DNA of 64,000 nucleotides from Octopus bimaculoides (GCF_001194135.2 NC_068991.1:54668799-54732798); one strand, 5' to 3'; counted from the stretch's first letter, positions 3,331-54,773 are shown. Translations and numbers: made by a program. The notes: generated by a model from the letters alone, not told the origin.

Positions 3331-3602
3331 AAGAGGTGGTCAGACTCTGCATAAGGAATAGACAACCACCATATATATATATATATATGTGTGTGTGTAT
3401 GTATGCATATACACATGTATATACACATACACACACACACATATACATATATATACGCATATATGTATATATATACATATATATATATATAATAATAATA
3501 TTAGGGACAAAATCCAAAATTACAAGTAAAAAACTCAATTAAAATCAATTTATAAAAAATTCAAATTAAATTGAGTTCTTGAAAATTGGTTATTTTCCCT
3601 AA

Positions 3603-17851: not shown

Positions 17852-18239
17852 GTAAGATAATGGTTAATTTTTTAAATACATTAGTCCCTGTTATATCAAA
17901 TACATTAAAAAAATGTTCCAGTTTAGAATTCCATTTGGCTCAAACATATTCACTGTAAAACCGGAATTAGTTAACAATTTTATAAATTTTTACCAAATAT
18001 ATCCACAAGCTCACACACATTTATACACGTGTGTGTGTATGTGTGTATAACACACTGCTTTCAGTTTCACTCTACCAAATCCACTTATAAGATTTTGGGA
18101 AGTGTGAGGCTGCTAGAGAAGATACTTGCCCAAGATGCTGTACAGTAGGACTAAGCATGAAACAATGTGGTTGCAAAGCAAATTTCTTAATCACATAGTC
18201 AAGGGTTCTTTATAGTTATCTAAAAATATCATTTAAGTG

Positions 18240-18560
18240 ATATTACCATGGTTCTCAGAGTTCTCAATGGTTCTCAGAGTTCTGCTATTGAAGCCGTTGA
18301 TCTCTTTGCCAAAGTCTTTGAGAAGGGCCACATTTGTGCTCCATAGATCATTCTACCAAGGCTTTCCTTTCATTTGATGCATCAGCTGCAGGCTGGAAGA
18401 GACCACATGGTAGGCCTTGCACCAGATAGCTGGACATGATTAGGGAAGATCTCCAGAGGCTCAATGTCACCTTGAGGATGCAGAGGAGCTAACACAGGGC
18501 TACCAGTGGTAGAGACCTGGTCAATTCTACACTTGATAACACTTCTGGGACCACAAACTT
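18240..18560 (+). mobile_element. RTE LINE 3' fragment
   Basis: Translates as AGWKRPHGRPCTR*LDMIREDLQRL, the RTE C-terminal R.RGRP...W motif. Confidence 0.6.
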
Positions 18561-18850
18561 GAGATGAGCTCAGCCACATTAAGCAAGAGCATGAATCAAG
18601 CAAGCATTTAAGTGATGGATCATAGTGTGGCATTATACTGCACCACATAACTTTTAATAGAAAGTGCAAGTAGGTATTAAGATAGCTTTAAACTAGTGAT
18701 CTCTATCAAGATGAAACAAATGATCCTTAAAATATGCAAATAACAATATTATTTTATGCCTATGTCATTATTTGAGAAAATTTAATAACTCATACTGGAA
18801 TCTATTTCGAATTATTAAATATGCATCTTACCTTTTCTTGTATTTTTCAG

Positions 18851-18916
18851 ATGATTCTAAAGTTCTTTGATATTTTCTTGAAAATGAAAAATATTACATC
18901 ATCAGAATCATTCTTG
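18851..18916 (+). CDS. RyR: RyR exon (MILKFFDIFLKMKNITSSESFL)
   Basis: TTTTTCAG / GTAAAA; MILKFFD.FLK motif; phase 0 to 0. Confidence 0.96.
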
Positions 18917-19221
18917 GTAAAATTATATTTTCTTTTTATTCAGTTAGATATTTTACAGAATTATTTATGTGCAGGTGTGTCTTTGCATGTGTGTGTGTGT
19001 GTGTGTGTGTGTGTATAGACACACACATATATATATATATTTATTTATATATATTTCTTTGTATATATGAAACTTTAATTAAATACAGTTATACCCATAT
19101 ATATANNNNNNNNNNNNNNNNNNNNNNNNNNNNNNNNNNNNNNNNNNNNNNNNNNNNNNNNNNTATATATATATATAAATTTACTTATGTATGTACCTAT
19201 ATGCACATATATAAATGTCTG

Positions 19222-19265
<44 letters not shown>

Positions 19266-20299
19266 CATACACCTGTGTATGTATATCTGTGTGTATATAT
19301 TTTATATTTGCAAATATATATATATATTTGCATATGTATTTATTTGTACATGTGTATATATGTATGTACATTTATATACATATATGAATATACATACATA
19401 CACAAATATATACTAGCATATATGTATATATATATGAGTAAATATATATGTATGCATACATATATATATAGAGAGAGAGAGAGACACACACACACACACA
19501 CACATGTATATAAATATACATGGGTGTTGTGTGTGTGTGTGTGTGTGTGTGTGTACAGGTAAAAAAACCATGATATTGATATTCCTGATATATCTCTGGC
19601 TATTTCTTTCTTCATTTCTTTCTCATTTGTCACACAGCTTCTCATTTCTCATTCCTCCTATTCTTCTATACATTTAAGTCTCTCACACATATTTTTATTA
19701 AGTGTCTGTCTACCACTCTCTCATACATTCCTCACCCTCTCTCTTATTGACTCAACCATACTATCTCCGTAATTAGAGACTGAGCGGTTTTGGTTTGGTG
19801 CCACCCATTTGGTGTTGTTGATTCAATGCTGACTACTTTTTTGGTATCAGACATTTCTGTATATGTCTCCACTGCCTTCTCTTCATCCCTCTCTCACTCC
19901 CTCTCTCTCTCTTTATGTGTGTGAAGAGAAGCAAAAGTGTTTATGTCAATCATGATCAGTTAATAAATTATAATACCTCTCACTCCCTATCTTGCTCTCT
20001 CTTTTTCTCTCTTTCTCTATTTGTATGAGTATACTTTTGTACATGCATGCATATGCATGTATGTGTGGTTGAGGGTTGTGTTTGCCTCCAGTGCCAAAAT
20101 TTACTGCCACCAAAGCAGGTTGAATATCCAGTCAGCTGTGCCAAACCGTCAGCATCCAAAACAGCCTTGGCCACTCATTTTATTCCAATAATAAAGGATA
20201 ACATAGGGTCTCTCCTTATACAATTTTCCCACACCAACATTCTTTATCAGTTTATCTCCTTTTCATCAAAACACATGTATCAAGGAATGGCAGTAGAAC

Positions 20300-20460
20300 T
20301 GTCTCGGAGTGGTTGGCGTTAGGAAGGGCATCCAGCTGTAGAAACTCTGCCAAATCAGATCGGAGCCTGGGGTAGTCATCTGGTTCACTAGTCCTCAGTC
20401 AAATCGTCCAACCCATGCTAGCATGGAAAGTGGACGTTAAATGATGATGATGATGATGAT
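20300..20460 (+). mobile_element. Short copy of the RTE-type 3' tail (truncated LINE or RTE-tailed SINE)
   Basis: Near-identical to 59330-59500; related minus-strand copies near 8870-9070, 11290-11470, 38835-39050 and 49075-49350. Confidence 0.7.
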
Positions 20461-22871
20461 TTACTATCACCTTTCTTTATTCCAAGCCATCTTTCTGTCT
20501 CCTCAATATAATCTTTCATTGATAGCCATCACTCTCTCTCTCTCTCACAATTATCCCTCTCTGATGCTATCACTTACTCTCTCTTACTATTTCATACTAT
20601 CTCCCATATTTTTGCTATTCTTCATCACTTCACTCTCCTTTTCATTTTACTTCTATTCTTGTCACTCATTATTGACATGGACATCTCTACTCTTTTTTTA
20701 TATAGGTTTCTCCCCACCATTTCTATTTCTCTTCCTTACACCACCCTGTCTTTATTCTATATGCAACTGCCTATAAATGTATTTCTTTATCAATACTTTC
20801 CACCATATCGCTGTCTAGATTCTATCATTCTGTTCACAATCCTTCTAGAAATCAAAATCTCTTTAGATTTACATGAGACAAGGCCACTACTCTAGTGCTG
20901 GAGCCACAATGAAATGCATCCAGCAGAGTTAAAATATGTTCTGTGAAGTACCTGGTGAACAAAGGAAGACAACTGAGAGCATTCTTTAGTGTTGCCTAAT
21001 ATATATATATACACACACACATACACACTTATTTATATACAGATACACATGTGTGTGTGTGTGTGTGTGTGTATTTGTAGCTTGTAACAAACAGGAATAA
21101 TAGAACTCAATACATAGGAATATATATTTCTTTTGTTCTCTTGTAAAGTTACATAAGTAACTCCAGAGCCAAGAGAGTCATGCATTCCACTTACCAAACA
21201 AACTTTAAGTTCATGGATTCACTCTTTATAAACAGAGGAATTACAATTTTCTTTTTAGAATGTTCAATCAAAACTCCCCAATAGTAATTTTGATCAAACA
21301 TCCTGAGAAAAATTATAATTCAATCCTATTTAAAAATGAACACTTGAGATTATTTTCTCTCAAAACATTTTTTTTATGAAACATACATTTATATTTGACT
21401 TAAGTAACTGTAAGTCATGTATGATTAAAAATTCAGTCAATTAAAATTTTCTGCTTATAATTTTGCATGTAGAAAAGTAATAAAACATTTCAAAAACTAA
21501 CCATAACATGTTCAAATATACTGTCGCCACAAATCAATTGCTTTTCCCTTTGCCTAAAACTTTTAAGGCCTCACCTCCTTACAGTTTATGTGTGTGCATG
21601 TTGATTTTTTTTTTTTAACATAAATTTAATTCTTTTGACATTATCTTAGATTATAAAAAATTACTTTTGTCTTATCAAGAACAAAGTAAATCTAGTTACT
21701 CTTTACCAATAGCAAAAAGCAAGCAATACAACCTGTTTCTACATTAGTCAAAATCTTAGTGTTTTTCTAGTACTTCTACTCTGATAATATTATTGCCAAA
21801 TTTTTTGGTAGTTAAATATGAGGATATCAAACATCATGTGTCAGCAGAGTAGTATACAAGTGAACAAAAAGGTTCTGAATAAACTGTGAATGTGTGTAGC
21901 TTTGAATTTCAAGGAAGTTCAAGGATTTTTTGCTGAGCAAATGTGTTGTTCAAACTCTAAAAATGTATCAGTTTTTAGAATTAGTATGTATTTTTACATA
22001 TTATAGGAGACAACTAAAAGAGTTGGTGTCAGTAAGGGTATCCATTGTAAAATGCTGCCTCAAAATTTCCTGTTTTATACATAGCAGATGAGAAAAGTAG
22101 ATATAAAACAATGTTATAATAGAATGAAATTATAATAATAACACATAGCAAAACTGTATCAGTCATATTTTTCATTCAATAAGATCATTTTGTTTCAAGT
22201 TTCCTGAGAAAATTCATCTTATGCTTTGATTTTCGAAGATTCTTTCATTTATCTTCAAATACTTTCCCAAAGTTCTGTCTTTCCATTATCATCTGAAGAT
22301 TGGAAATGACAAACTCAAACTAATAATGAAATATGATACATTTATATGTTGATAGACATACAGGTATTCATATACTTATATATTTATATATGGTCATCAT
22401 TGTCTTTTAATATACAGCTTTCATGCTGACTTGGGTTTGGATGGATCAACAAAATTTAATAAGATCAGACGACTGCATCATGCTCCAATGTCAATTTTGG
22501 CATGGCTTCTACGATTGGATGCCCTTCCTAATGCAAATAATCTGACAAAGTATACTGAGTGCTTTTCTCATGGTACCAGTAGTGAAGATGGCCTTGTAAC
22601 TTGCAAGGCTAAGAGTTTAAAATGGCCTCTAGAACTGAGGGAGAATTGAAGAGAGAGTGAAAGATGATTCCACATGTGAGGGATGAGGGAGGACAAGAGG
22701 AGAGGAACAGATTTATAGTTGTGATAGGATGGTAGTGGGGAGAGTGAAGGGACTTGTAACAGGCAGTATTGAGAAAAAGGGCAGGAAAAGTGATAGGGCA
22801 GGCTGTGTAGGAAGTGATCTAAGGTTATCCAACATTATAAAGTGCAAATATGGAGAGAAAGCATACAAAAA

Positions 22872-22904
<33 letters not shown>

Positions 22905-22978
22905 CAGGGGCATGTGGTGATCTTTCTGGCTGGAGAAGCAATGACCAAAATTTTCTGTCACATAGATATTTGAATCAA

Positions 22979-23252
22979 ATTGGATTGGTACATAATTATT
23001 GCAGCTTTTTTTCAACAAATTTTGTTCAAAAAAAACAATAGCAATATTGAACAAAAACATCTTTAAATGACAGTTTGGCCGTCTGCCAAGCAAATGAGAA
23101 GCAGTAATTGAAGTAGATGATGAATATGCTCCAGAATAATCATTTAAAGATGTTTTTGTTAAATGTTGTTATTGTTTTTGTTACATGTTGTTATTGTTTT
23201 TGTTGAATAAAATTTGTTGAAAAACGTCGCAATAATTATGCCCCAACCCAAT
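22979..23252. mobile_element. AT-rich fold-back element with ~80-100-bp inverted arms
   Basis: CATAATTATTGC...CATCTTTAAATGA (22991-23070) mirrored by TCATTTAAAGATG...GCAATAATTATG (23140-23240). Confidence 0.7.
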
Positions 23253-23994
23253 ATTTTTAAAATTAAAAAAATCACATTTTATATTAAGGGTGTTCTGTAA
23301 TTTGAAAAATTATAAAATATTAATTGAATAAACACAGAAAACTATGCCATTATCTTTTCACTGTTTTTCTGATGAAAGCAGAATGTCAAATTACTTCCAC
23401 TTTTCCTATGTAAACATAACAACGTAAGATTATATATATCATAGGTATTGCAAATTGATAGAAACTTAATCTAAGTGTATAAGTATTTATTAACATCTAA
23501 AACTATTCATTATCAACTCTTACTAGAAAAAAATTGTCTTTGTGGCATTTTTATCAGAAAAAATGTTTAAAAATTACATCGAAAAGGATGCAATAGCTCA
23601 TATTGCTTCCCTTACAGGTTTTTTGTGTTGTCTGCCACTGCTTGACGTCTCATGCTAATTCTGACAATAAAAATCTGAAGCCTATGATGTCATGTAGTTT
23701 ATATTAATTTTACAGAACATTAGAAGAACGATCTTATGAAAAATAAGTAATATAGTTTCAATTTTGCTTCTATAATTTTTAAGGGAAGCCTCCCTTGCTT
23801 CCATGGACCACACACTTATGATATATATATGTTTATANNNNNNNNNNNNNNNNNNNNNNNNNNNNNNNNNNNNNNNNNNNNNNNNNNNNNNNNNNNNNNN
23901 NNNNNNNNNNNNNNNNNNNNNNNNNNNNNNNNNNNNNNNNNNNNNNNNNNNNNNNNNNNNNNNNNNNNNNNNNNNNNNNNNNNNNNNNNNNNAT

Positions 23995-24026
<32 letters not shown>

Positions 24027-24040
24027 ATACATATATATAT

Positions 24041-24350
24041 AGCCTTAGGCTGACCAAAGCCCTGGTAGACAGAAACTGAAAGAAGCCCATCATGTGTGTG
24101 TGTGTGCTTATGTGTGTTGGTCTGTGTTTGTGTGCCCCCCCCCCCACACACACACACCACCATCACTTGACAACCGATGCTGGTGTATTTATGACCCTGT
24201 AACTTAGTGACTCGACTAAAGATACCGATAGAATAAATACTAGGCTTACAAAGAATAAATTCTGGGGTCGACTTCTATGACTAAAATCCTTTAAGGTGGT
24301 GTTCTAGCATGGCTGCAGTCAAATGACTGAAACAAGTAAAAGAATAAAAG
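24041..24350 (+). mobile_element. Abundant long SINE family with central (TG)n and tail ...GCAGTCAAATGACTGAAACAAGTAAAAGAATAAAAG
   Basis: Related copies near 32462-32665, 43288-43440 (tRNA head), 45713-45860, 48100-48333, 56946-57235, 61345-61476; minus near 12800-12960 and 43790-43890. Confidence 0.75.
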
Positions 24351-24577
24351 AATATCTATCTACACACACTAATCCCTCATCATATCGCAGTTCACCTATA
24401 ACGGTTTATTATTTAAGCTTACGTCAATTCCTCCATAGTGTTGTTTTGCATTTATAATTAAATATATACAAATTATAAAAATAATTAAAGAAATGTACAG
24501 TACTGTTTCTACTTCACAGATTTTCACCTATAGCAGGGAGTTTTGGAATGTGACACCCATGGTAGTCAAGGGATTAC

Positions 24578-24631
<54 letters not shown>

Positions 24632-25448
24632 CTTGGTGTGTATGTGAGGTAGAGAGATGTGTGTGTGTGTGTCTCTCTGTCATACCCAAGCAGTAAGCTT
24701 TCTAACCAAAGAAAACAAAAAAAATATTGTCAGGAATGCTAGAAAATAATTATATTCTGTTGAACTTGGAATCCATAAAACTATTTAATTCTACAAAAGA
24801 GAGTGTGCCAATCTAACATAAATCTTAATTATATGCTGACACCATTTTTTACTTAAAATATTTGTTCATTTGTTGTTGATTTTTTTTTATTCTGTTTCTA
24901 TTAATATCACCATTCCTATTTGTATAAAACCATTTTGGATTTTTATACAACATACAAAAATGGTATTTTACAGCACTGCAATATTTGACAGTTTTGTTTT
25001 ATTTTAACGCAGTACCTAGCAAAATGTCATTTCAAAGAGCTATTTTTTATCAAATTTTTATTTGCCATTACATATCATCATACAACACACACATACACAA
25101 ACACACACACACACACAGCACACACACACATACACACATGCATATAATGAGGTTACAATATATTAAAAGTGGAAAGATTTCTGGTTTTCCTATCCTTTCT
25201 TATCTAAAATGAGGATATTTACATAATTTCTTAATTAGTCTTTAAGTTCTAAAATATATTCTTTAAGTTCCAGAAACCATGAGGCTTTTCATAAATTCTT
25301 TCTGTAAAATTGTACAAGTTTTGACATTAAACTTGTCCCTCAGAAAAGACGTACAAAATCTTTTCATGGCTAAAGAAACTTGCCTCTTCAAATTTGTGCA
25401 TGTAATTTATCTTACCAAAATATAGAATTCTTTCTTACCAAACTATAG

Positions 25449-25528
25449 GACTATGATACTAATCGGGATGGCTACATATCAGTGAAAGAATTCAGGCAAC
25501 TAATGGAATCACAGAAAATGTACTGCCG
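25449..25528 (+). CDS. RyR: RyR EF-hand 1 exon, variant A (DYDTNRDGYISVKEFRQLMESQKMYC-R); absent from the ORF track
   Basis: CTATAG acceptor, GTGTGT donor, 80 nt, phase 0 to 2, no stop; same length and phase as 30000-30079; canonical EF loop DTNRDGYISVKE. Confidence 0.87.
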
Positions 25529-25939
25529 GTGTGTATGATTGCTTTTACACATAACTGTCCAGTTGTGGTCACTATGCCTTCCCTAAAGTGCTATATTATT
25601 ATTACATGATGGTGTTGTTGGTAACGGTGAAGAAAATAACTTGTGTTGTCTTTGTTTTTTGTAGTTCTTGTTGTTGTATCTCCATTTATATTAAGGCAGA
25701 ATTATTGAATATTTTCAATACTTCAACTCATTTATTCAACAACATTTAACTCAGAGAAATATTGTTTTTATTTCTTCTATAAATGAAAGATTGACAATCA
25801 ACAAATTAATATTTTGCAATCAGATTAAACCAATACATTTCAAACTAGATTTATATTTCCTAAGAAATATTGTTATAATTTGATTTCAAATACTGACTGG
25901 AGACACTAACAACATACAACAAAAAACATCATATATATG

Positions 25940-26004
<65 letters not shown>

Positions 26005-27769
26005 ATACATGTATGTATATATACACAAACACACATACACACACATGTGCATAGAGGTGTGCATGATTTCAGTACAATCTTCTATATCTTCAAATATACA
26101 TTTTTTTTTATATTCTTTGCCTGAGTTGGTGCCAGCAAACAGTCAATTTTCTGTGTCTTCATCTTCTTCATTTGGTTTGAATTCTAGTCACCACATAATT
26201 TCATTCTTGAATGTACTTTTCTTTATTATTTAACGAATGCATATCTTTTACTATTCATTAATTAATTTGTTCATTAACAGATATCTGTTCCTGCTTACTT
26301 ATGTCTTTTTCTATTCTATATTCTGCCTTATTTTGAGTCATATATATTTATTTATTTATTTTATACATTTATCTCTTATTTTCAAACTCTCAAACCTATT
26401 CCTTTATGTTGAATGTTTTTGTATCATTTGAAATATTCTGTCGCTTTGAAATAGTTTATTGTTATTGGTGCTATACAATTTGATAGTTTGTTTTTATTTT
26501 ATTTTTTACATATTTCTTTTTATGCATGAAAAATTTAAAAATCGTGTGTTTCATTACAAATTGAAAATGATCCAAATTAGAAAAATGTAAGCATTTGTGT
26601 GTGTCTAGTTTTTCAAAGACATATATTTAAATAAAGGAATGAAGGGAAATTTTCCTCATGATATTGGTGTTGTTAGTCTTACAGGTATGATAAATATTTA
26701 TAGAAAAAGTAGTTATTCTAATTGAAATACAAATATTTATGGCAGTCAGCAAAAATGTATTTTTTGTAGGAGATGGGGTATTTTACAATACTTTCATCAC
26801 CATCATCATTCTTATCATCTTCCACATTAATATTTTCATTAAAATCATCATAATTACAGTAGTTATAACATGGCTACATATCTGAGTAGTAAATATAACC
26901 TTTGCCAGTTATTAACTCTCTAAACACCATTTATCTGACAAAGTCATTTTCAGAATTCTAAACTATCATATTTTGTTGTACCTCAAGAGGGTCCATATTG
27001 CTTGCACTGGTTCAGTTTTTTCTTTTATCTCTTTTGGTTAAGTGAAGGCAGTGAGCTGACAGAATTGTTAGCATATCGGACAATGCTTGGTGGCATTTAG
27101 TCTGTCTTTACATTCTGAGTTCAAATTCCACTGAAGTCAACTTTGCCTTCTATCCTTTTGGAGTCGATAAAATAAGCACCAGTCAAATTCTGAGGACGAT
27201 GTAATCAACTTACCCCTCCCCTTAAAAATTGCTGGCCCTATGCCAAAATTTGAAGCCATTGTTTTTGGTCAATTGGTTAACTATTTAACCAATTAATTAA
27301 TCAATTGTTTGATTAATCATTCGTTCAGTCAGTCAATCAATCAATCAGCTAGGTGATGAAACAACTTTGACAAACATATCACATGTTCTTTACTCAGTTT
27401 TGAAAATTACAGATGACCAAGTCAGTAAGATAATGGCCAATTAGCTAAAGGAGTAACAGCTTATAATCCTCTCCTGGAACTACACTTTCTGTGAAGAAGA
27501 CACTCAGCACACCCATTAGCTTACAGCACCTCTGGTACAATTCTCCATTGCAATTAATGGGTGTTTATCAAATATCAGTGCTGAATTCAACCGTCAACAT
27601 TAAACTACATCATCAAAAGAGTCCTTTCTCTTTTTCAAGAGAATTTGGTATTATATTAAAGATTTATTCACTACTTTTGGTAGATCAAATGACCATATAG
27701 AGATTTCATCATTGGTTCATCAGAAGCAATTATTAAGTTTCATATTTATCACTAATGATACTATTGTTC

Positions 27770-27912
27770 ATATTTACATCATTTACATTTGATGATTATT
27801 TGTCCTCATCTTGTTTGTTGTTAACACATTTCGGCTGATATACCCTCCAACCTTCATCAGGTGTCTTGGGGAAATTTCAAATCTGGGTTCTCATTCCTAA
27901 GGTATTTTCCAA

Positions 27913-27960
<48 letters not shown>

Positions 27961-28060
27961 TATTATTTATTACTATTATTCAGGTCACTGCTTGGAATCA
28001 AACTCAGAATCTTGGGGTTAGTAGCCCGTGCCTTAACCACTATGCCATATGCCCATGGGC
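27770..28060 (-). mobile_element. tRNA-headed SINE-like element with internal (AAT)n and damaged hammerhead motif (copy 1)
   Basis: Minus strand: A-box TGGCATAGTGG, B-box GAGTTTGATTCC, (AAT)n, GACAC-CTGATGA-A-GGTTG..CAGCC-GAAA-T-GTGTT (CGT deleted). Confidence 0.8.
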
Positions 28061-28315
28061 ATTTAGTTGATGTTTTTCCCAATGGTTGTAATGGTTCCTC
28101 TCACAGACGAGGACATGTCCTGCTCTTTCTGCTATTCCTCTAGCTTTATATGAATCTTCTGGTGTCATTATATTCAAGCCAGGTGATATTAGCTTTGAGT
28201 CTCTACATCTACACAAGAAAGTTAGATGGTTTGAAAGACGAGCTAGTTTTGATGGAGTTTCTCTATATGTCTCTATTGAAGTCTAATGTCAGCTCCATAC
28301 TGATTAGATAATATA

Positions 28316-28544
28316 GTTCTATATTTAAGACATGAGGAATTATGTACATTATTTACATTATTTACATTTGACAGACATTTGTCCTCATCTTCTTTGTTGT
28401 TAACACAACGTTTTGGTTGATATACCCTCCAGCCTTCATCAGGTGTCTTGGGGAAATTTCGAACCTGGGTTCTCATTCCTAAGGTATTTTTCGATGTTAT
28501 TATTATTATTATTCAGGTCACTGAACTCAGAATCTTGGGGTTAA
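28316..28544 (-). mobile_element. Same SINE-like element, 5'-truncated, hammerhead core mutated (copy 2)
   Basis: Reverse complement of copy 3; CCGAAA changed to CCAAAA. Confidence 0.8.
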
Positions 28545-28573
28545 AAGATTCCGAGTTCGATTCCAAGCAGTGA

Positions 28574-28617
<44 letters not shown>

Positions 28618-28787
28618 TCAAAAAATACCTTAGGAATGAGAACCCAGGTTCGAAATTTCCCCAAGACACCTGATGAAGGCTGGAGGGTATATTAGCCGAA
28701 ACGTTGTGTTAGCAACAAACAAGATGAGAACAAATATCCATCAAATGTAAATAATGTACATAATTCCTCATCTCTTAAATATAGAAC
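28544..28787 (+). mobile_element. Same SINE-like element, 5'-truncated, intact hammerhead core (copy 3)
   Basis: B-box GAGTTCGATTCC at 28553-28564, (AAT)n, hammerhead motif at 28665-28710. Confidence 0.8.
28665..28710 (+). ncRNA. Minimal type I hammerhead ribozyme motif
   Basis: Stem I GACAC/GUGUU; core CUGAUGA (28670-28676) plus an extra A; stem II GGCUG/UAGCC; GAAA (28698-28701); palindromic ACGU stem III; GUU triplet 28703-28705. Confidence 0.75.
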
Positions 28788-29847
28788 AATACTATTGTTG
28801 TTATCAAAGTCTCTGAGTTACAGACATAATGATGACAATGACAATATTACAATAGTTGCGTGAAGGCAGCAAACTGACAGAATCATAATGTGCCAAGCAA
28901 AATGCTTAGTGGCATTTCGTCCTTCATTACATTCTGAGTTCAAATTCCACTGAAGCCAACTTTACCTTTCATCTTTTTGAGGTCAGTAAAATAAGTTCCA
29001 GTTGAAGACTGAAGTCGATGTAATCACTTACCACCACCTACACCTCCATGCCAAAATTGCTGGCCTTGTGCGAAAATTTGAAACTAATATTACAATAGTT
29101 GTGTTACTATTGGATTATGCCATTATTGCAAATAACATACCTTTTAATTTAAGATTTCATTCTCAGCAACGTTAAGTGATTCGAATAAAATATTAGCTTC
29201 TGTATGGTGAGGAGATAACAAATACCTCTAAAATCGATTGCACTTACAATCGCTAAATCTTGGGTTTAATTCCCAGATCAAGCAATGCTTTGTGTTCTTG
29301 AGCAAAGCACTTCATTTCCCCTCCGACTGAAAGGGACATTGGAGCAATATGTTATTATCCTTATCCTCATTTTAATATATTTTCTTCCCCTGTTAGTATG
29401 GTTCAGACAGATGTACAATAGTCTTATTTCATGCCTCTTGTTTTCTCCTCCTTTATCATATCTCATCAATCTTACAAGTAGTTTTTCTTCTTACACCATT
29501 TTCACTCTGCATTTTCCATTTATAATACATGTAGTATTATCTCCTGTATATGATGTCTACTTATGATTAGCAACTTTTGTTAGATTATTGCCACATTAGT
29601 ATTTTCACTGAAATTTTTTATTAAAATATAATGTTTTTTTAAGACAGTAGGGTGTGATTTGAGGGAAGGTTCACTTCTGTTTTTAGCAGTTTATGGATAG
29701 AATTTCTCAAATTTTCATCTGTACAATACAATTTGTATATATCACCATTTTCTCAGCATTCATTTGAGATTTTGTTTTTTTTATATATTTCCTGTTCTGT
29801 TTTTATTTCACAAGTTTTATAATTTCTTTTTTTATCATTATTATTCC

Positions 29848-29911
<64 letters not shown>

Positions 29912-29999
29912 GCTCTATTTTGCTGGAAATGTCTTCATCAATTTTAGCTGTCCTGCTTAGTTATCAATTATTACCTTTCATTTGCCTCTGCCCTATCAG

Positions 30000-30079
30000 G
30001 AATTTGATGCTAATCAAGATGGCACCGTATCCCTCAAAGAATTCCGTAATGCAATGGAACAGCAAAAAGTGTATTCTAA
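30000..30079 (+). CDS. RyR: RyR EF-hand 1 exon, variant B (EFDANQDGTVSLKEFRNAMEQQKVYS-N)
   Basis: CTATCAG / GTAAGT; 80 nt, phase 0 to 2; EF loop DANQDGTVSLKE. Confidence 0.93.
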
Positions 30080-33000
30080 GTAAGTCAAAAAGCATGTAAG
30101 AAACAAGAAAAAATAAAGTTAAAAAAAAAATTCTTCTGTTGCTGTTTCCATGACTACTAGCACCACTACTACTACTACTATTACTACTACAACTACTACT
30201 ACTACAAACTTTTGTTGATTTTTTTTTTACAATTGTTGCTATCTGCTCTCATTTGTTTTTAGAGTGTAGTTCCTGCTACAGTTACTTCTATTGCCGTATC
30301 AAAAAAAAAAACAAAAAAAAAAAACAAGACAATGTAGAATGGAATTCAGTGCTTGCTCTATTAGTTTGCATGACAAAACAAGAAGAAAGTTGAAATTTAA
30401 AAAATGTGATTTTTCCAAACATCTTTTTTTGCTTTTCAAACAAAATAAAATAGATTTTTGAGAAAAAAATGTTTTAAATATTTTTGAAGTTTATTGAGTG
30501 GTTTTATTAATTAATTATTTTATTAAAGTTGCTATTTAATTATAGTATTTAGATATGCTGGAATTTGTGTTGGGTGCTTTGAAATTAATCTGGTGAATCA
30601 ATGATTATAATTAATACCTAATTAATTTAACTTGTTATTCTAGGGTTTCAAATATTAATCATTAACAGCCAACATGTATTGCTGCTCATCACTGTCTCGT
30701 TTTCTGTTCCTGTCAGTCTCTTCCCCCAACTCATTCTCTCACTCTTCCTTCTCCATCCCATGATAGCTACCGCTCTACTATCGCCCCTTCTTCAATTCAC
30801 CCACTCAATCTTATTTGAGTTGAATGAAAGGAGAGAATGTAAAATCAAGAGAACTCTTTAATCTTGTAAGGTAAAAAGTAGCCTCTCTAGTAGTGATGCC
30901 ATGTTAAAATGTATCTAGTACACCCTTTTAAAATAGTCAGTGAATAAACAGAGACAATATAGAGTCCTCAGAGAACACTTTCACTTTGTCAAAAGCATGA
31001 CTGTGTCTTTAGTACTGGTATAAATTTAACTAGTTCCAGCTCAAGAGTTACAGCCTTGCTAGGACACCACTGTTAGCATTACTATACCTTCACTACTTGA
31101 AACTTCCTCTGACATGTGGAATTTGGTGAATGAGAATGAAGTGAGTTTGATGCTGCAGTCCTCATCTGCATTTCCTGCTGTGAAGTAAGCTCATCCAGAA
31201 CTCCTGACAGGAGGAAATCCAGTTCTGTTTTGATGATACCTATGTCCACAGCATGCAGGTACTCTCAGGTTTCTGGGGTGAATATTGAAGAGCCGTGAGT
31301 CCTTGAAATCCAAGCTGCTGCAGAATTTGTCTTGATGGCAATGTTGGGATCTTTGACATGCAATGGCACCTCGTTCTGATGTTTGTGTAAAGAGATTAGG
31401 GCAAAAAGGACTCAAGCAATAGAGACCATGCTAAGAAAATGGAATATACAAGCAAAAGGTGGTCCTCCACTCTGTCCTGGGGAGATGGTCAGTAACCCCG
31501 AAATGTGGATTGACTTGAACTATGATAATCCATCCAACCCTTGCCTGCATGAAAAACCAATATGAAATAATGATGATGATGATGACAGAAACAAAGAGAA
31601 GGAGACTGCCCAGATTTCTAAGGTCTTTCATATAAATCTGTTATATGATGAAGAAATAAAATATGATGAAGAAATAAAAATAAACAAAATTGTACAATAT
31701 GTTTCCAACCATGTGACATGTATGCCCTTTCTCATCCATTCTCTCTTTGTCTGTCTCTGTCTCTCACTTTGTCTTTCTCCTCCTCCCCTCTCTATTTCTT
31801 TCTCATCTCTTTTTCATCTCTCCCATGTAACTCTCATCCTTACTTATATTTCTCCTTCCTCTCTTAACNNNNNNNNNNNNNNNNNNNNNNNNNNNNNNNN
31901 NNNNNNNNNNNNNNNNNNNNNNNNNNNNNNNNNNNNNNNNNNNNNNNNNNNNNNNNNNNNNNNNNNNNNNNNNNNNNNNNNNNNNNNNNNNNNNNNNNNN
32001 NNNNNNNNNNNNNNNNNNNNNNNNNNNNNNNNNNNNNNNNNNNNNNNNNNNNNNNNNNNNNNNNNNNNNNNNNNNNNNNNNNNNNNNNNNNNNNNNNNNN
32101 NNNNNNNNNNNNNNNNNNNNNNNNNNNNNNNNNNNNNNNNNNNNNNNNNNNNNNNNNNNNNNNNNNNNNNNNNNNNNNNNNNNNNNNNNNNNNNNNNNNN
32201 NNNNNNNNNNNNNNNNNNNNNNNNNNNNNNNNNNNNNNNNNNNNNNNNNNNNNNNNNNNNNNNNNNNNNNNNNNNNNNNNNNNNNNNNNNNNNNNNNNNN
32301 NNNNNNNNNNNNNNNNNNNNNNNNNNNNNNNNNNNNNNNNNNNNNNNNNNNNNNNNNNNNNNNNNNNNNNNNNNNNNNNNNNNNNNNNNNNNNNNNNNNN
32401 NNNNNNNNNNNNNNNNNNNNNNNNNNNNNNNNNNNTATATATATATATGTATATATATATATGTTTGTGTGTCTGTGTTTGTCCCCCAACATTGCTTGAC
32501 AACTGATGCTGGTGTGTTTACATCCCTGTCACTTAGTGGTTCGGCAAGGGAGACCGATAGAATAAGTAGTAGGCTTACAAAGAATAAGTCCTGGGGTCGA
32601 TTTGCTCGACTAAAGGTGGTGCTCCAGCATGGCCGCAGTCAAATGACTGAAACAAATAAAAGAATAATATATCTTGAAAGAGTTTAACTCAGGTATCTAC
32701 TTCTCTAAGAATGGATAAAAATAGATTGCTTACAAAATTTTAAGCAATTATATCATTCAAGTCAGTGAAGATATCAGTCAAATATGATATTAGCAAAGTA
32801 TGATATCAGTAAAGTAATAATTCATATCAGTTTTATGTATCAAAATATTCAAATATTTTTAGATTTATTTTTTACTCTGACTGTTTTTAAACCTTCATGG
32901 CTACATTTCTTAAGGAATATGTTGTGCAAATGTTTCAATTAATTTAGAAAATAATGAAGATTTTGAAGAAGTTTTATTAAAATAGCTGATGATGTCATCG

Positions 33001-33397
33001 CTAGCATGGTAGTTAAAAATATAGCTTAAAAACGGTTCTCATATAAATTATGATGGAAGATTTTAATGTAAATATAGATATTCTGCAACAAGATGTTTTA
33101 TATCATAAGCCCGAAGACATTGTCAACCAGGCTGGTATCAAGAGGGGTTTTTTTTTTTTTTGTTACTAATCCATTTGAAAATTCAAACACCATATGTGAT
33201 GACGTATAAGACAACCCTTTTTCTCAAGAAAAATATCTTAGAAAATTGCTGCAGATCCTGTATGCAAAATTGGGCCTATATTACATGTTTTAATGCACTA
33301 AATATTTGTTTTCCTGAATGTACTCTGCTGAAAATGAAGTGCGTCTAATATATTTGTGTCTCTTTTAGCTATTAAATATAGGAATTAAAAAGTCTTT

Positions 33398-33660
33398 GGC
33401 TTAGTGGTTAAGGTATTCAGTTCACGGTCATAAGGTCATAAGTTCAATTCCTGGTGGTGCATTGTGTCCTTGAGCCAGACCCTTCACATTGCTCCAGTCC
33501 ACTCAGTTGACAAAAATGAGTTGTATCTGTAATTCAAAGGGCCAGCCTTGTCACCTTCTGTATCACACTGAATCTCCCTGAAAACTATGTCAGGGGTACA
33601 CATGTCTGTGGAGTACTCAGCTACTTGCACATTAATTTGACTGTTCCACTAGAACCTTTG
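33398..33660 (+). mobile_element. tRNA-headed CORE-like SINE family
   Basis: TGGCTTAGTGG A-box, GTTCAATTCC B-box, GTGTCCTTGAGC...CACATTGCTCCAGTCCACTCAG core; copies near 16314-16530, 40073-40320, 45146-45460, 54388-54625 and 60433-60560. Confidence 0.7.
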
Positions 33661-34571
33661 TTGTTTTAACAGATTGAGTGCCAGTACAGTAATTAGAATA
33701 TTAAGCTGTTTGTTTTAGCTGGAAGAAATGTATTTATTTGCTGGAACAGTTAAATTAACTTTTCTTATTATGTTAATACTTTATCCAACTGAATTATTTT
33801 CATAACCAGTTTTAGATTGATCATCAAGACAAGTTTCACACGGCATTTCATTATCCTCATTGTTCATGTTTTTTTTTTTCCTTTTATCTGATATCATAAA
33901 CGAACTCAAAATATATTTATTTCTATATCCTTATCTAATGTGATGTTTTATAATGTTCTATGAAATTTCATATCTAAATAGATATTAAATATTTAGTTTA
34001 ATTTTTTAATAGATTCCTTTTTGTTTTTTGTCTTCTTTTTTCATTTCTTTATCTCCTTTTAGCACTTTCAAATCCTTGCCTCTCTCTGTGTGTGTATGTG
34101 CTTGGCACCATTAACAAACATCATCTGTTTACATTTGTTTTTTACATATGTTTACATGTTACTATATTGACACTGTTTATCAATAACACTAAAAAATGCC
34201 TTATTTTTTCTAAATATTTTATTGTTAATTATAAACATTATTGTTCAATGTCATTAATTACCTTGTGAATTACCTTTGGTTATTAGATGCTACTTTACCA
34301 AGAGATTTTATATATGATGTATATGGTTCAGTCTTTTATAACATAATTTGCTTAAATTATTTTATTCTGATAACAAAAATTACAGGAATCCCTTGGTGTG
34401 TATCTTATCATTTATCAACTTGATTGTATATATATGTATATATATTTTAATAATTTATTATTAATAATAAATTATTAAAATATTTTTCAATATACAACTC
34501 AATTTGATATTATCAAATTGTACTTCCTTGTAAGTTCAGATTTTGTAATTCCCTAACATTATAATATATGC

Positions 34572-34603
<32 letters not shown>

Positions 34604-34609
34604 ATATGC

Positions 34610-34644
<35 letters not shown>

Positions 34645-34682
34645 TATGTATGTATGTATGCATATATATATTTATGTATGTG

Positions 34683-34725
<43 letters not shown>

Positions 34726-35482
34726 GGTTTATTTTATTGTTAATATTAACCAAACCACCAAACATTTCTGATTGCAAACACATATAAATAAAAAGACTTA
34801 AGTATATATTTATATTCATGTATTTATGTTTAAGAGAAAATTGTGTATATCCATACTTATATATATGTATCTACCACAAACATATATATACATCAATCAT
34901 ATATGTTTCTAAATATCTTGTTTTCTCATTATTCATTATGGACAATAATGAATAAATATTATATAATGCTAATAAACCATATTTGTATGTAAAATGTAAC
35001 ATTTTAAAACAGATTTATTTATCAACAATTGATTATTGAACTTAAAACTTTGTTAGATCTTACTAATTAATTAAGATTAGCTTGGTTATTTTGTGATGCT
35101 AAGTTTCCATAATCATTAATTTGCAATCTGAACAATGATTAAGATCATTTTGTATCAGTGAAAAGATAGGAAAAAAATATTCCTGCCCAATGTTAACACA
35201 AACTTATGACAAAGAAAATTAACATTTCAGTGTTTATTTTCTTGAAAATATGTATAAATATTCAAAAGTTTCTACTGTTGTTGTTAATTTCATATTGGAT
35301 AAATAGAAAATATCTGTATAAAATTCAATGGAATTTTATTGATATTTTAAAGTATTTCTCAATAGAAATATTCTTCAAATATTTCCAATTATATTTTTGT
35401 ATTTTTGTGATGATATACTTTTACGCCATTTTTTCAATATGGTTTTATTATGATAAATATTTCATTGTGGCTGTTTTTGCAG

Positions 35483-35644
35483 CGAGGAGATTGATTACAT
35501 CATGATGTGTGTCGATGTGGACCAGGATGGAAAAGTTGATTATGATGAATTTACTGAGCGTTTCCATAATCCAGCAAAGGATATTGGTTTCACCATGGCA
35601 GTCTTATTGACTAATCTTTCTGAACACTCACCCAATGATCCACG
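35483..35644 (+). CDS. RyR: RyR EF-hand 2 exon (EEIDYIMMCVDVDQDGKVDYDEFTERFHNPAKDIGFTMAVLLTNLSEHSPNDP-R)
   Basis: TTTTTGCAG / GTAATG; RFH.PAKDIGF..AVLLTNLSEH motif; phase 2 to 2. Confidence 0.97.
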
Positions 35645-35814
35645 GTAATGAAATAAATTACTATTCGATTTTGATTTTACTCTGTGTCCCCTAAAATCTA
35701 AAACATTCTTGTATTATATGTCAAGTTTTGTACCCATTTTTAATGCCGCTCACAAAAATGGATTTTAATGATTAAATACAGTGGAGTATCCTATATACAA
35801 ATTGTTCTCTAAAT

Positions 35815-36181
35815 CAGTGGTTCTCAATTTGGGTTTATATGGCCCTTCAGGGTCCATATGAGATCTGGTTGTTCAAATTTATGTACAATAAAATAGTTAT
35901 ATTTCTACAATTACACAAAATGTTAAATCATAAGGCACAAAAAGAAAATGACTCCCCAGACACAACAGAATATGCTTCAACACACGAAATCACATTAAGA
36001 ATCTTACAAGCCAAATCCAAAAACAAAACAAAATGTTTAAACATTTTTTAATACAAATCTTAATATTTAATCATAAAAATATAATAGGAGATTTTAGGCA
36101 TCAAACAGCTATGAGGGTGTCTCTTTTGAGTAAAATAGAAATCAATGGTGCCTTTAAGCAAAAAATTGTTGAGAACCATTG
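35815..36181. mobile_element. hAT/Charlie-type MITE
   Basis: TIRs CAGTGGTTCTCAA / TTGAGAACCATTG; 8-bp near-TSD CTCTAAAT / TTCTAAAT. Confidence 0.8.
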
Positions 36182-36846
36182 TTCTAAATTAACAAATTGA
36201 ATAAAAAAATTTTCTGAAGAAAATTATATTCACCCAACAAGGTAAAATTTGAACAACAGAGCACAAGCAGACTATGCATGAATATAAGTGGCTCGGAAAT
36301 ATGTACAAACATTTTGTTAATGTCTATAATGTCTATAATTTTCGTATTTTATACAGAAATTGATAATGTTTCTCATNNNNNNNNNNNNNNNNNNNNNNNN
36401 NNNNNNNNNNNNNNNNNNNNNNNNNNNNNNNNNNNNNNNNNNNNNNNNNNNNNNNNNNNNNNNNNNNNNNNNNNNNNNNNNNNNNNNNNNNNNNNNNNNN
36501 NNNNNNNNNNNNNNNNNNNNNNNNNNNNNNNNNNNNNNNNNNNNNNNNNNNNNNNNNNNNNNNNNNNNNNNNNNNNNNNNNNNNNNNNNNNNNNNNNNNN
36601 NNNNNNNNNNNNNNNNNNNNNNNNNNNNNNNNNNNNNNATATATATATATATATATATATATACATACATATATATATATATATGCATTTGCTGTCAATG
36701 GATGGACAAATAAAACAATTTCATATTTTTATATGGAGTTTGGATACGACTTCTATTTATATGTATTTCAATTAATCATGTAACAAATAATTTGGTTAAT
36801 GAACAGGGCTTCAGAATTGCATATATTCATATATAGGAGCGCCACG

Positions 36847-54119: not shown

Positions 54120-54241
54120 GTCAGACTACGATATGCTGAACAGTATGATTATGAAAGCATCAGTAATCTGCTAGGTATGAAGAAAGGAGATTCAATAACC
54201 ATAGAAGATACAGTACAGCATACTGGAATGTTGCCAGCTTT
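54120..54241 (+). CDS. RyR: RyR exon (VRLRYAEQYDYESISNLLGMKKGDSITIEDTVQHTGMLPA-F)
   Basis: TTGTAG / GTAAGT; I..LLGM motif; phase 0 to 2. Confidence 0.92.
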
Positions 54242-54773
54242 GTAAGTACTCACTTTTCTTGATCTTTATATCTCTTAAGTCATTGTCACAAAATTATGTT
54301 GGTAGTAGCAAGTAGAATGCTTTCAATAGCTCATCTGCTGCTTTGTATAAAATATTCAAATAATTTTACTTTTGCGGTAAAAGGTAAAGGCCTATGGCCT
54401 AGTAGTTAGGATTTTGTCCTCACAATTTCAAGATTGTGATTTTGATTCCTAGTCAAGGTGGTGCATTGCGTTCTTGAGCAAAGCATTTCATCATGCATTG
54501 CTTCAGTCTGCTGAGCTGTAAATGAGTAAATCTGCTAGAGGCTAGCATCTTATTCAGAGGGAATGATGTGATCTTGGTCGCTTAAACACCATGGAAACCA
54601 GATAACTGGCCCTATGAGTCCAGGGTCTTGAGACAGTCATTTCCAAATATTGATAATGATGAAGATGACATAGTAAAAGTAACAATTAAACTAATTAAAT
54701 TGGAAACTTTACACAACTTTATTGACCCATCAGTTTTACCTGATTGTTTGTTTGTTATTTTATCTTTTCTCAG

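What the first reader, a model, noticed from the sequence alone, without database searches (positions are those of the whole stretch)
25449..30079. Mutually exclusive EF-hand-1 exons: a swappable Ca2+-sensing loop in the ryanodine receptor
Seen: two 80-nt, phase 0-to-2, stop-free GT-AG exons lie between the MILKFFD exon and the EF-hand-2 exon. A (25449-25528) reads DYDTNRDGYISVKEFRQLMESQKMYC-R and B (30000-30079) reads EFDANQDGTVSLKEFRNAMEQQKVYS-N. They align without gaps and keep all EF loop ligands, while the DNA is heavily diverged, which points to an old duplication with protein-level selection on both copies. Including both shifts the frame and gives a TGA early in the EF2 exon; skipping both also shifts the frame, so exactly one must be used. 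Exon A is missing from the ORF track, so single-isoform annotation could miss it. Established: the RyR EF-hand pair contacts the S2-S3 loop of the neighbouring subunit and is implicated in Ca2+-dependent regulation. Inference: one RyR gene could tune Ca2+ inhibition or luminal sensing by tissue (muscle versus neuron) through exon choice. Variant A also adds a Cys that could be redox sensitive. I do not recall this splicing event being described, but cannot confirm novelty.
Basis: partly seen in the sequence, partly recalled or inferred. Interest (0 to 1): 0.9.

Follow-up and report, generated by a model that had tools for sequence, protein, structure and literature searches.

The report
Alternative EF-hand-1 exons in ryanodine receptor
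This calcium-release channel gene carries two interchangeable 80-base exons for its first calcium-binding EF-hand, and the same array of two to four copies occurs in at least a dozen distantly related invertebrate genomes, so one gene probably makes channel versions with different calcium feedback.

Summary
Exons A (25449-25528) and B (30000-30079) are 80 nt each, AG/GT-bounded and stop-free. They lie between the MILKFFD exon and the EF-hand-2 exon of a ryanodine receptor (RyR) gene. Using exactly one keeps the reading frame; using both or neither gives early stops.

The same arrangement, with 2, 3 or 4 tandem 80-nt copies, occurs in 13 other animal genomic loci of unidentified species whose synonymous sites are saturated. 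Both copy classes show pN well below pS. In 18.5 kb, only the four exons are conserved at DNA level.

Exon A belongs to the upstream, more conserved class (Arg split codon, non-consensus donor G|GTNYGT). Exon B belongs to the last-copy class (donor A|GTRAGT). About half the lineages, including this window, have GCATG 13-30 nt downstream of the last copy.

The swapped segment corresponds to rabbit RyR1 4079-4105. It holds the EF1 loop, whose ligands are invariant, and K4101, which contacts the S2-S3 loop in Ca2+ inactivation.

Five spliced metatranscriptome contigs from relatives each carry exactly one copy, always last-copy-like. No transcript of the A type was found.

I found no publication describing this. 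It is a new member of a known kind, the mutually exclusive homologous exons. The effect on Ca2+/Mg2+ inhibition is inferred.

The parts
18851..18916 (+). Constitutive upstream exon (66 nt, ends in phase 0), MILKFFDIFLKMKNITSSESFL. It corresponds to rabbit RyR1 4057-4078 and contains the E4075 equivalent (E19).
25398..25402 (+). GCATG (in context TGCATG) 51 nt upstream of exon A. Candidate Rbfox-type site in a position where such sites usually repress the exon. Also seen upstream of the first copy in L025 (-81) and L026 (-64).
   Evidence: function inferred
25449..25528 (+). Exon A: the first (upstream) copy of the EF-hand-1 exon, 80 nt, DYDTNRDGYISVKEFRQLMESQKMYC plus CG of an Arg split codon. 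Corresponds to RyR1 4079-4104(5).
25529..25534 (+). Donor of exon A, G|GTGTGT. This non-consensus class lacks A at +4 and is shared by 16 of 17 non-last copies in 14 loci.
30000..30079 (+). Exon B: the last (downstream) copy of the EF-hand-1 exon, 80 nt, EFDANQDGTVSLKEFRNAMEQQKVYS plus AA of an Asn split codon.
30080..30085 (+). Donor of exon B, A|GTAAGT. The consensus GTRAG class is found in 14 of 14 last copies.
30092..30096 (+). GCATG 13 nt downstream of exon B. The same pentamer lies at +13 to +30 downstream of the last copy in L023, L025, L026, L055 and L075, of the middle copy of L023 and of the single copy of L024. Candidate Rbfox-type enhancer.
   Evidence: function inferred
35483..35644 (+). 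Constitutive EF-hand-2 exon (162 nt, enters in phase 2). Its first base completes the split codon of A or B. Reads EEIDYIMMCVDVDQDGKVDYDEFTERFHNPAKDIGFTMAVLLTNLSEHSPNDP.
54120..54242 (+). Exon for the part of the S2-S3 cytosolic loop that the EF-hand domain touches in RyR1, VRLRYAEQYDYESISNLLGM.... It has Glu at the D4730 position and Ser at the R4736 position.

Best explanation
The two exons form a cluster of homologous, mutually exclusive exons that arose by an old tandem duplication. Each encodes the first EF-hand of the RyR (equivalent to rabbit RyR1 residues 4079-4105).

Shown by sequence:
- Each exon is 80 nt (3n+2), so a productive mRNA must contain exactly one. Double inclusion or double skipping gives a premature stop, and such mRNAs would be expected to be removed by nonsense-mediated decay.
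- Both copy classes have been kept as coding sequence across lineages whose synonymous sites are saturated.
- The Ca2+ ligands are invariant. The differences sit in non-ligand loop positions, in the exiting helix next to the invariant Lys that matches RyR1 K4101, and in the split-codon residue (Arg in upstream copies; Asn, Asp, Glu or Lys in last copies).

Inferred:
- Exon B, with its consensus donor and the type seen in transcripts of relatives, is the default or major form.
- Exon A, with its conserved non-consensus donor, is a regulated form that needs activation, or repression of B.
- In this lineage a GCAUG-binding Rbfox-type factor bound just downstream of B (and upstream of A) favours B in excitable tissues.
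- The two isoforms differ in how the EF-hand domain docks on the S2-S3 loop of the neighbouring subunit, and so in the Ca2+/Mg2+ concentrations that inactivate the channel. This would give a single-gene animal something like the vertebrate RyR1/RyR2 difference.
For: Identity as RyR EF1 rests on an ungapped alignment of the 103-aa isoform to RyR1, RyR2 and RyR3 (E 1e-31 to 1e-34, query position i = RyR1 residue 4056+i), on Pfam EF-hand hits for both isoforms, and on the window mapping to RyR residues about 3865-5020 with EF1 the only exon hit twice.

Conservation:
- Tandem 80-nt AG/GT stop-free copies occur in L011, L012, L015, L019, L025 and L026 (2 copies), L023 (3), L055 (4), and L075, L081, L082, L086 and L087 (2 or more).
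- pS is 0.53 to 1 or more, while pN is 0.07-0.22 for copy 1, 0.23-0.36 for copy 2 and 0.03-0.14 for EF2.
- The exons are the only conserved DNA in the cluster.

The class signatures replicate in the second, independent set of loci. GTRAG donors occur in 1 of 17 non-last copies against 14 of 14 last copies, and non-last copies mostly end in CG, giving Arg.

GCATG is the top 5-mer at +7 to +40 downstream of last or single copies (6 of 10, p about 1e-7 uncorrected). It never occurs within 40 nt downstream of the other non-last copies (L023's middle copy, which also has a GTRAG donor, is the exception).

Five intronless metatranscriptome contigs (L028-L032) carry exactly one EF1 exon between the flanking exons.

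Functional context from the literature:
- K4101-D4730 and E4075/Q4078/D4079-R4736 contacts form in the Ca2+-inactivated RyR1.
- K4101E and K4101M weaken Ca2+/Mg2+ inhibition.
- The EF-hand region accounts in part for the RyR1/RyR2 difference in inhibitory Ca2+ affinity (PMC8947763, PMC10832476).
- NMD enforces exclusivity of non-3n exon clusters in C. elegans (PMC4165533).
Against: - No transcript with an A-type (upstream-copy) exon was found in any species. All five spliced contigs carry a last-copy-like exon, and the only other RNA-derived contig examined (L027) retains the intron upstream of EF2. Expression of A therefore rests on conservation alone.
- The GCATG element is absent near the last copy in L011, L012, L015, L019, L081, L082, L086 and L087. 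Only 2 of the 8 close occurrences are the full TGCATG. In the replication set it appears in 2 of 6 loci, and those two are probably related.
- The window's S2-S3 loop has Ser where RyR1 has R4736, so only one of the two vertebrate salt bridges can be conserved.
- The species of the comparison loci are unknown.
- A 26-residue tree does not resolve whether there was one duplication or several.
Confidence: 0.75

Rival explanations
1. Only one of the two exons is used. The other, A as the reader feared or else B, is a decaying pseudo-exon left by a duplication.
For: No A-type transcript was recovered. Exon A has a weak donor. The window's exon A is the most divergent of the upstream-class copies.
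Against: Both classes keep exact length, AG/GT boundaries, an open frame and all EF ligands in 14 loci whose synonymous sites are saturated and whose introns share no similarity. pN of the upstream class is lower than that of the last-copy class. The Arg split codon of the upstream class is only meaningful if that exon is joined to EF2.
Confidence: 0.03
2. The extra copy works as a poison exon. Its regulated co-inclusion with the other copy shifts the frame and sends the RyR mRNA to nonsense-mediated decay, tuning RyR dosage rather than making a second protein isoform.
For: Double inclusion does create a stop. Non-3n exon clusters do produce NMD substrates in C. elegans (PMC4165533).
Against: A poison exon needs no amino-acid conservation. 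Yet both classes show pN well below pS, invariant Ca2+ ligands and an invariant K4101 equivalent. The number of copies varies from 2 to 4 while every copy stays an intact EF-hand.
Confidence: 0.05
3. Both isoforms are made but are functionally equivalent. The duplicates persist through neutral subfunctionalisation of splicing regulation (different tissues, same channel properties).
For: The Ca2+ ligands and K4101 are identical in all copies. Last copies vary a lot between lineages (pN 0.23-0.36). D4730 mutations had little effect in RyR1 (PMC10832476).
Against: Class-specific differences at the 4102 and 4105 equivalents persist: Met against V/F/I/L, and Arg against N/D/E/K. These positions flank the contact Lys. 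The EF-hand region sets inhibitory Ca2+ affinity in vertebrate RyRs.
Confidence: 0.15
4. Exclusivity is imposed by competing RNA base-pairing (docking site and selector sequences, as in insect Dscam or 14-3-3 xi), not by frame and NMD with splice-site competition.
For: In L011 the flanks of the second copy pair strongly (z = -11), and in L026 more weakly (z = -3.1). The window's exon B is flanked by complementary T-rich and A-rich tracts.
Against: No pairing partner is consistent across six loci. The window's complementary tracts are low-complexity. No intronic sequence is conserved between genomes.
Confidence: 0.07

Closest known systems
Mutually exclusive exons 37a/37b of vertebrate CaV2.1, CaV2.2 and CaV2.3 channels (EFa/EFb)
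   Same: A pair of homologous, mutually exclusive exons swaps an EF-hand(-like) module in a Ca2+ channel and acts as a switch for Ca2+-dependent regulation, with cell-type-specific use (PMC8205089).
   Different: Different protein family (plasma-membrane voltage-gated channel against intracellular release channel). The CaV2 module is EF-hand-like and works with calmodulin, whereas here both variants are canonical Ca2+-binding loops inside the RyR EF-hand pair. Function here is untested.
Insect RyR mutually exclusive exons ASI a/b
   Same: Same gene family, same splicing mode, and developmental and tissue regulation shown by cloning (PMC3989282, PMC6026295).
   Different: That site lies in the second SPRY domain (residues about 1135-1167), roughly 3000 residues upstream of the EF-hands. 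The one arthropod-like locus examined (L020) has a single EF1 exon.
Vertebrate RyR1 versus RyR2 EF-hand domains (paralog divergence)
   Same: The same structural element, residues 4079-4105 within the 4065-4298 region, helps set inhibitory Ca2+ affinity through contact with the S2-S3 loop. K4101 is conserved here.
   Different: Vertebrates obtain the variants from separate genes and have non-canonical EF loops. Here one gene offers the variants by splicing, and the R4736 partner is Ser.
Rbfox (FOX-1/ASD-1)-regulated mutually exclusive exons, such as the C. elegans clusters with UGCAUG in flanking introns
   Same: GCAUG lies close downstream of one exon of a mutually exclusive pair. Eleven of 29 C. 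elegans clusters carry UGCAUG, and non-3n clusters rely on NMD (PMC4165533).
   Different: Only the core GCATG is conserved here, in about half of the lineages. No binding or dependence has been tested. unc-68 (the worm RyR) is not among the C. elegans clusters.

Membership tests
Ryanodine receptor EF-hand domain, EF1 | Sequence homology to the RyR EF-hand pair region, in the right place in the protein | tested here: met
   Ungapped phmmer alignment of up+A+EF2 to RyR3, RyR2 and RyR1 chains, E 1e-34 to 1e-31, RyR1 4057-4159. Neighbouring exons match RyR residues about 3865-5020 and Pfam RR_TM4-6.
Ryanodine receptor EF-hand domain, EF1 | Canonical 12-residue EF loop (D1, D/N3, D/N5, G6, hydrophobic 8, E12) in each variant | tested here: met
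   A has DTNRDGYISVKE and B has DANQDGTVSLKE. Pfam EF-hand_1 and EF-hand_7 score above their cut-offs for both isoforms. The ligand positions are invariant in the 19 copies tabulated; the copies from the later loci were read from their translations, where one (L082 c2) has Val in the residue before the loop.
Ryanodine receptor EF-hand domain, EF1 | Actual Ca2+/Mg2+ binding and contact with the S2-S3 loop | not testable with these tools
   Only inferred from rabbit RyR1 structures and mutagenesis. The K4101 and D4730 equivalents are present, and the R4736 equivalent is Ser.
Cluster of homologous mutually exclusive exons (tandem exon duplication) | Adjacent exons of equal length and phase, with sequence homology and their own splice sites | tested here: met
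   80 nt each, phase 0 to 2, AG/GT, 53/80 nt and 14/26 aa identical. The same holds in 13 other loci.
Cluster of homologous mutually exclusive exons (tandem exon duplication) | Joint inclusion or joint skipping is non-productive | tested here: met
   Both give frameshifts with early stops.
Cluster of homologous mutually exclusive exons (tandem exon duplication) | Mature mRNAs contain exactly one exon of the cluster | tested here: inconclusive
   This is true in five spliced metatranscriptome contigs of related RyRs (L028-L032). At least one of these (L028) resembles a lineage with a single EF1 exon. No transcript of the window's own species was available.
Cluster of homologous mutually exclusive exons (tandem exon duplication) | Each exon of the cluster is used in some mRNA | not testable with these tools
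   Last-copy-like exons are seen in transcripts. No upstream-class exon was seen. Purifying selection on both classes is the only support.
Rbfox-regulated alternative exon | (U)GCAUG in the proximal downstream intron (activating) or upstream intron (repressing), conserved across species | tested here: inconclusive
   The window has GCATG at +13 of B and TGCATG at -51 of A. The motif lies at +13 to +30 in 6 of 14 last copies, in L023's middle copy and in L024's single copy, and within 40 nt downstream of no other non-last copy. It is the top 5-mer in an unbiased scan, but it is missing in 8 lineages.
Rbfox-regulated alternative exon | Exon choice depends on an Rbfox protein | not testable with these tools
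   Needs a minigene or knock-down experiment.
Docking-site/selector (competing RNA structure) exon clusters | Conserved intronic complementarity between one docking site and a selector next to each variant | tested here: inconclusive
   An RNAduplex screen of 150-nt exon flanks in six loci found no consistent pair. It gave only lineage-specific signals in L011 and L026, and low-complexity repeats in the window.
U2/U12 spliceosome-incompatibility exon pairs | One flanking intron of U12 type (conserved /RTATCCTT donor) | tested here: not met
   All donors are GT followed by non-U12 sequence, and all acceptors are AG.
Insect RyR ASI a/b exon pair | Located in the second SPRY domain (about residues 1135-1167) | tested here: not met
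   The pair here maps to RyR1 4079-4105. The insect site is described in PMC3989282 and PMC6026295.

The most novel reading that the evidence does not exclude
An ancient array of 2-4 interchangeable EF-hand-1 exons, widespread in spiralian (mollusc-like) animals, lets a single RyR gene produce channels with different set points for Ca2+/Mg2+ inactivation or luminal Ca2+ activation. This would be the splicing counterpart of the vertebrate RyR1/RyR2 paralog split. The choice would be made in excitable tissues by an Rbfox-type factor acting on the GCAUG next to the last copy, against a deliberately weak donor on the upstream copy.
Probability: 0.3. Interest if true: 0.75.

Novelty: new member of a known kind. 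Interest (0 to 1): 0.62.

Why it matters
The role of the RyR EF-hand pair is still debated. It has been linked to Ca2+/Mg2+ inactivation in RyR1 and to luminal activation in RyR2, but not to cytosolic activation.

Natural variants retained by selection in many lineages exchange exactly residues 4079-4105, keeping the Ca2+ ligands and K4101 while changing their surroundings. They are ready-made chimeras for asking which features of EF1 set inhibitory affinity.

For invertebrate physiology, the cluster would explain how animals with one RyR gene could fit Ca2+ release to muscle and to neurons.

For genome annotation, the upstream copy has a weak donor and no long ORF, so single-isoform gene models can easily miss it.

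Tried and rejected
1. Transcript evidence from the protein database. Two word-indexed protein searches, one with the A-form peptide and one with a 10-sequence profile of both forms, returned almost only exon-sized genomic fragments and no spliced A or B peptide of this species.
2. P0013 looked like a spliced transcript, but its contig (L027) retains the intron upstream of EF2.
3. The exhaustive representative search with the EF2 exon gave no full-length mollusc-like RyR. Cluster look-ups only named outgroups: Macrostomum, Dicrocoelium, Pomphorhynchus, Rhipicephalus, Lytechinus, Helicoverpa and Cooperia. Annotated isoforms could therefore not be checked. That look-up also corrected my first guess that P0004-type sequences were arthropod; they are nematode-like.
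4. The closest relative's contigs (P0005, L001-L010) are under 1.8 kb and do not reach the EF1 exons.
5. Haplotype contigs L013-L016 differ by 0.5% or less in introns, so they give no power for a within-species selection test.
6. The full-intron RNA duplex search timed out. The reduced screen was inconclusive.
7. The species behind the ENA and JGI contigs could not be identified. A search for assembly GCA_013332715 in papers found nothing.
9. The redox-Cys idea was dropped because the Cys is not conserved.
10. Steric hindrance as the exclusivity mechanism was rejected for this window, where the intervening intron is 4471 nt. It remains possible where that intron is 64-74 nt (L082, L087).


Full report
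**Observation**

The sequence is as described. The exon MILKFFDIFLKMKNITSSESFL (18851-18916) is followed, 6.5 kb and 11 kb downstream, by two 80-nt segments. Exon A is 25449-25528 and exon B is 30000-30079. Each is preceded by a pyrimidine-rich tract ending in AG, is followed by GT and has no stop in frame 0. The EF-hand-2 exon follows at 35483-35644.

Joining the upstream exon to A or to B and then to EF2 gives an open frame. A+B gives ...RRLITS*, and skipping both gives RGD*. A and B align without gaps, with 53/80 nucleotides and 14/26 residues identical. A six-frame motif scan finds only three EF loops in the 64 kb: A, B and EF2.

**Identity**

The 103-residue isoform aligns without gaps to solved RyR3, RyR2 and RyR1 chains (E 1e-34 to 1e-31). 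In full-length rabbit RyR1 the query position i equals residue 4056+i. The alternative exon therefore replaces residues 4079-4104 plus the split codon 4105. That segment is the last turn of the entering helix, the whole EF1 loop (4081-4092) and the exiting helix.

Both isoforms pass the Pfam EF-hand models. tblastn with two full-length invertebrate RyRs maps window 8.7-62.8 kb to RyR residues about 3865-5020 on the plus strand. Only the EF1 segment hits twice.

**Comparative evidence, first set**

The protein databases hold mostly exon-sized fragments of animal genomic contigs. I used those fragments to fetch nine other loci with up to 10 kb of flank. Between the MILKFFD exon and the EF2 exon:
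- L011, L012, L015 (with haplotype contigs L013, L014 and L016), L019, L025 and L026 have two EF1 exons.
- L023 has three.
- L024 and the compact, arthropod-like L020 have one.
- Rotifer sequences have one, fused to the upstream exon.

Every copy is exactly 80 nt, AG/GT-bounded and stop-free, with D1, N3, D5, G6 and E12 of the loop and the K4101 equivalent invariant.

Among five genomes the synonymous differences are saturated (pS 0.53 to 1 or more). Non-synonymous differences are 0.07-0.22 for the first copy, 0.23-0.36 for the second and 0.03-0.14 for EF2. A sensitive blastn of window 18000-36500 against eight loci returns only the four exons, plus one 50-nt match outside the cluster. Exon A matches the first copies of L012, L015, L019 and L023, and exon B matches the single copy of L024 and copies of L023. 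Both exons are therefore islands of selection in otherwise unalignable introns.

**Two exon classes**

Upstream copies mostly end in CG (once AG). With any first base of EF2 that gives Arg. Their donors are G|GTGTGT, GTCTGT, GTTCGT and the like. Last copies mostly end in GA or AA, giving Glu, Asp, Asn or Lys, and have A|GTAAGT or GTGAGT donors. At protein level the classes differ most consistently at the 4102 equivalent (Met against Val, Phe, Ile or Leu) and at 4105 (Arg against Asn, Asp, Glu or Lys). These positions flank the invariant Lys. Exon A belongs to the upstream class and exon B to the last-copy class.

**Replication set**

One scan of the metagenome collection with the profile gave 70 more loci. 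New tandem clusters appear in L055 (four copies), L075, L081, L082, L086 and L087/L088 (two or more), again all 80 nt.

The donor rule held in the new loci. No new non-last copy has GTRAG, and all six new last copies do. Overall that is 1 of 17 against 14 of 14.

A large group of related contigs has a single EF1 exon of last-copy type. I suspect from the sample series, but cannot show, that these come from annelids. The intron between copies ranges from 64 nt (L082) and 74 nt (L087) to 4471 nt (window).

**Transcripts**

Five contigs of that scan (L028-L032) are intronless across at least five exon junctions of the window. They read ...NGPIGKQMVD...MILKFFD...EF1...EEI...LERFLEKAR, and one comes from a 16.7-kb contig, so they are mRNA-derived. 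Each contains exactly one EF1 exon. In every case its junction residue (D, N, N, E, P) and its 4102 residue (I, T, T, V, L) are of the last-copy type.

This shows single inclusion and use of the last-copy class in relatives. No upstream-class transcript was seen anywhere, and none from the window's own species. The only other RNA contig examined retains an intron.

**Cis elements**

I tested three motifs known to bind splicing regulators and then ran an unbiased 5-mer scan. GCATG is the most enriched pentamer at +7 to +40 downstream of last or single copies (6 of 10; binomial p about 1e-7 before correction for 1024 words).

It lies at +13 of exon B (30092-30096). It does not occur within 250 nt downstream of any of the eight first copies in the first set, and it lies upstream of the first copy in the window (TGCATG, 25397-25402), L025 and L026.

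In the replication set it is present at +29 or +30 in L055 and L075 but absent in L081, L082, L086 and L087. The element is therefore real but confined to about half of the lineages. Regulation by an Rbfox-type protein is a hypothesis.

A screen for complementary intron segments found nothing consistent. None of the donors is of U12 type.

**Function**

Cryo-EM and mutagenesis of rabbit RyR1 show the following (PMC8947763, PMC10832476):
- The EF-hand domain meets the S2-S3 loop of the neighbouring subunit in the Ca2+-inactivated state.
- The contacts are K4101-D4730 and E4075/Q4078/D4079-R4736.
- K4101E and K4101M weaken Ca2+ and Mg2+ inhibition.
- The EF-hand region explains part of the tenfold RyR1/RyR2 difference in inhibitory Ca2+ affinity.

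The alternative exon contains the D4079 and K4101 equivalents. In the window's S2-S3 exon (54120-54242) the D4730 position is Glu and the R4736 position is Ser.

The most likely consequence of exon choice is therefore a change in EF-hand/S2-S3 docking, or in the metal affinity and kinetics of EF1 through second-shell residues, and hence in inactivation. This step is inference.

**Novelty**

Full-text searches found the well-known insect RyR mutually exclusive exons in the SPRY2 domain. They found no mention of alternative EF-hand exons in any RyR. The C. elegans catalogue of mutually exclusive clusters does not list unc-68.

The nearest functional precedent is the EFa/EFb exon pair of CaV2 channels. 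Automated isoform annotations of mollusc genomes may already contain both forms, and I could not inspect them. I class the finding as a new member of a known kind.

**Limits**

- The species of all comparison loci and of the window are unidentified.
- Assembly gaps lie inside the cluster's introns (19106-19163, 23838-23992, 31869-32435), so a further hidden copy cannot be excluded.
- A 26-residue tree does not resolve one duplication from several.

Noticed in passing
L023 10052-11239; L055 6066-7472: Some genomes have expanded the cluster. L023 has three tandem EF1 exons and L055 has four, all 80 nt with intact EF loops. In L055 copy 1 the K4101 equivalent is Arg.
   Followed up: partly
L082 1313-1536; L087 759-992: The intron between the two EF1 copies is only 64 nt (L082) or 74 nt (L087). 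That may be too short for donor and branch point to be used together, so steric exclusion could operate in those species, unlike in the window (4471 nt).
   Followed up: no
window 19106-19163, 23838-23992, 31869-32435: Runs of N (assembly gaps) lie inside the introns of the EF1 cluster. A further exon copy hidden in a gap cannot be excluded.
   Followed up: no
L012 about 5455, L015 about 7150, L026 about 7475 (16-25 nt upstream of first-copy acceptors): The heptamer CACTTGT recurs just upstream of the first-copy exon in three unrelated loci. ACTTG occurs within -3 to -60 in 5 of 8 first copies (p 3e-5 uncorrected). Its meaning is unknown.
   Followed up: no
window 54120-54242: The S2-S3 loop exon has Ser at the position of rabbit RyR1 R4736, a malignant-hyperthermia site and EF-hand contact, and Glu at D4730. 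Only one of the two vertebrate inter-subunit salt bridges can exist here.
   Followed up: partly
window 13954-14968 (minus strand): ORFs with a reverse-transcriptase RNase H-like domain (Pfam RT_RNaseH_2, E 6e-12): a retrotransposon fragment inside a RyR intron.
   Followed up: partly
window 2916-3326 (+), 3327-3542 and 4371-4520: A C2H2 zinc-finger ORF lies upstream of the first RyR exon match. Next to it, two near-identical short ORFs (MQEVVRLCIRNRQPPYIYIY...) flank an assembly gap. This is probably a repeated mobile element.
   Followed up: no
window 29770-29850 and 30105-30130, 30296-30327: Exon B is flanked by a T-rich tract upstream and A-rich tracts downstream that are complementary. 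Pairing could loop the exon out, but the sequence is low-complexity and the feature is not seen in other loci.
   Followed up: partly
L029 (contig Ga0123370_1041863, 16.7 kb): This appears to be a near full-length RyR mRNA from a marine metatranscriptome. It could serve as a reference cDNA for a mollusc-like RyR and for finding other alternative regions.
   Followed up: no
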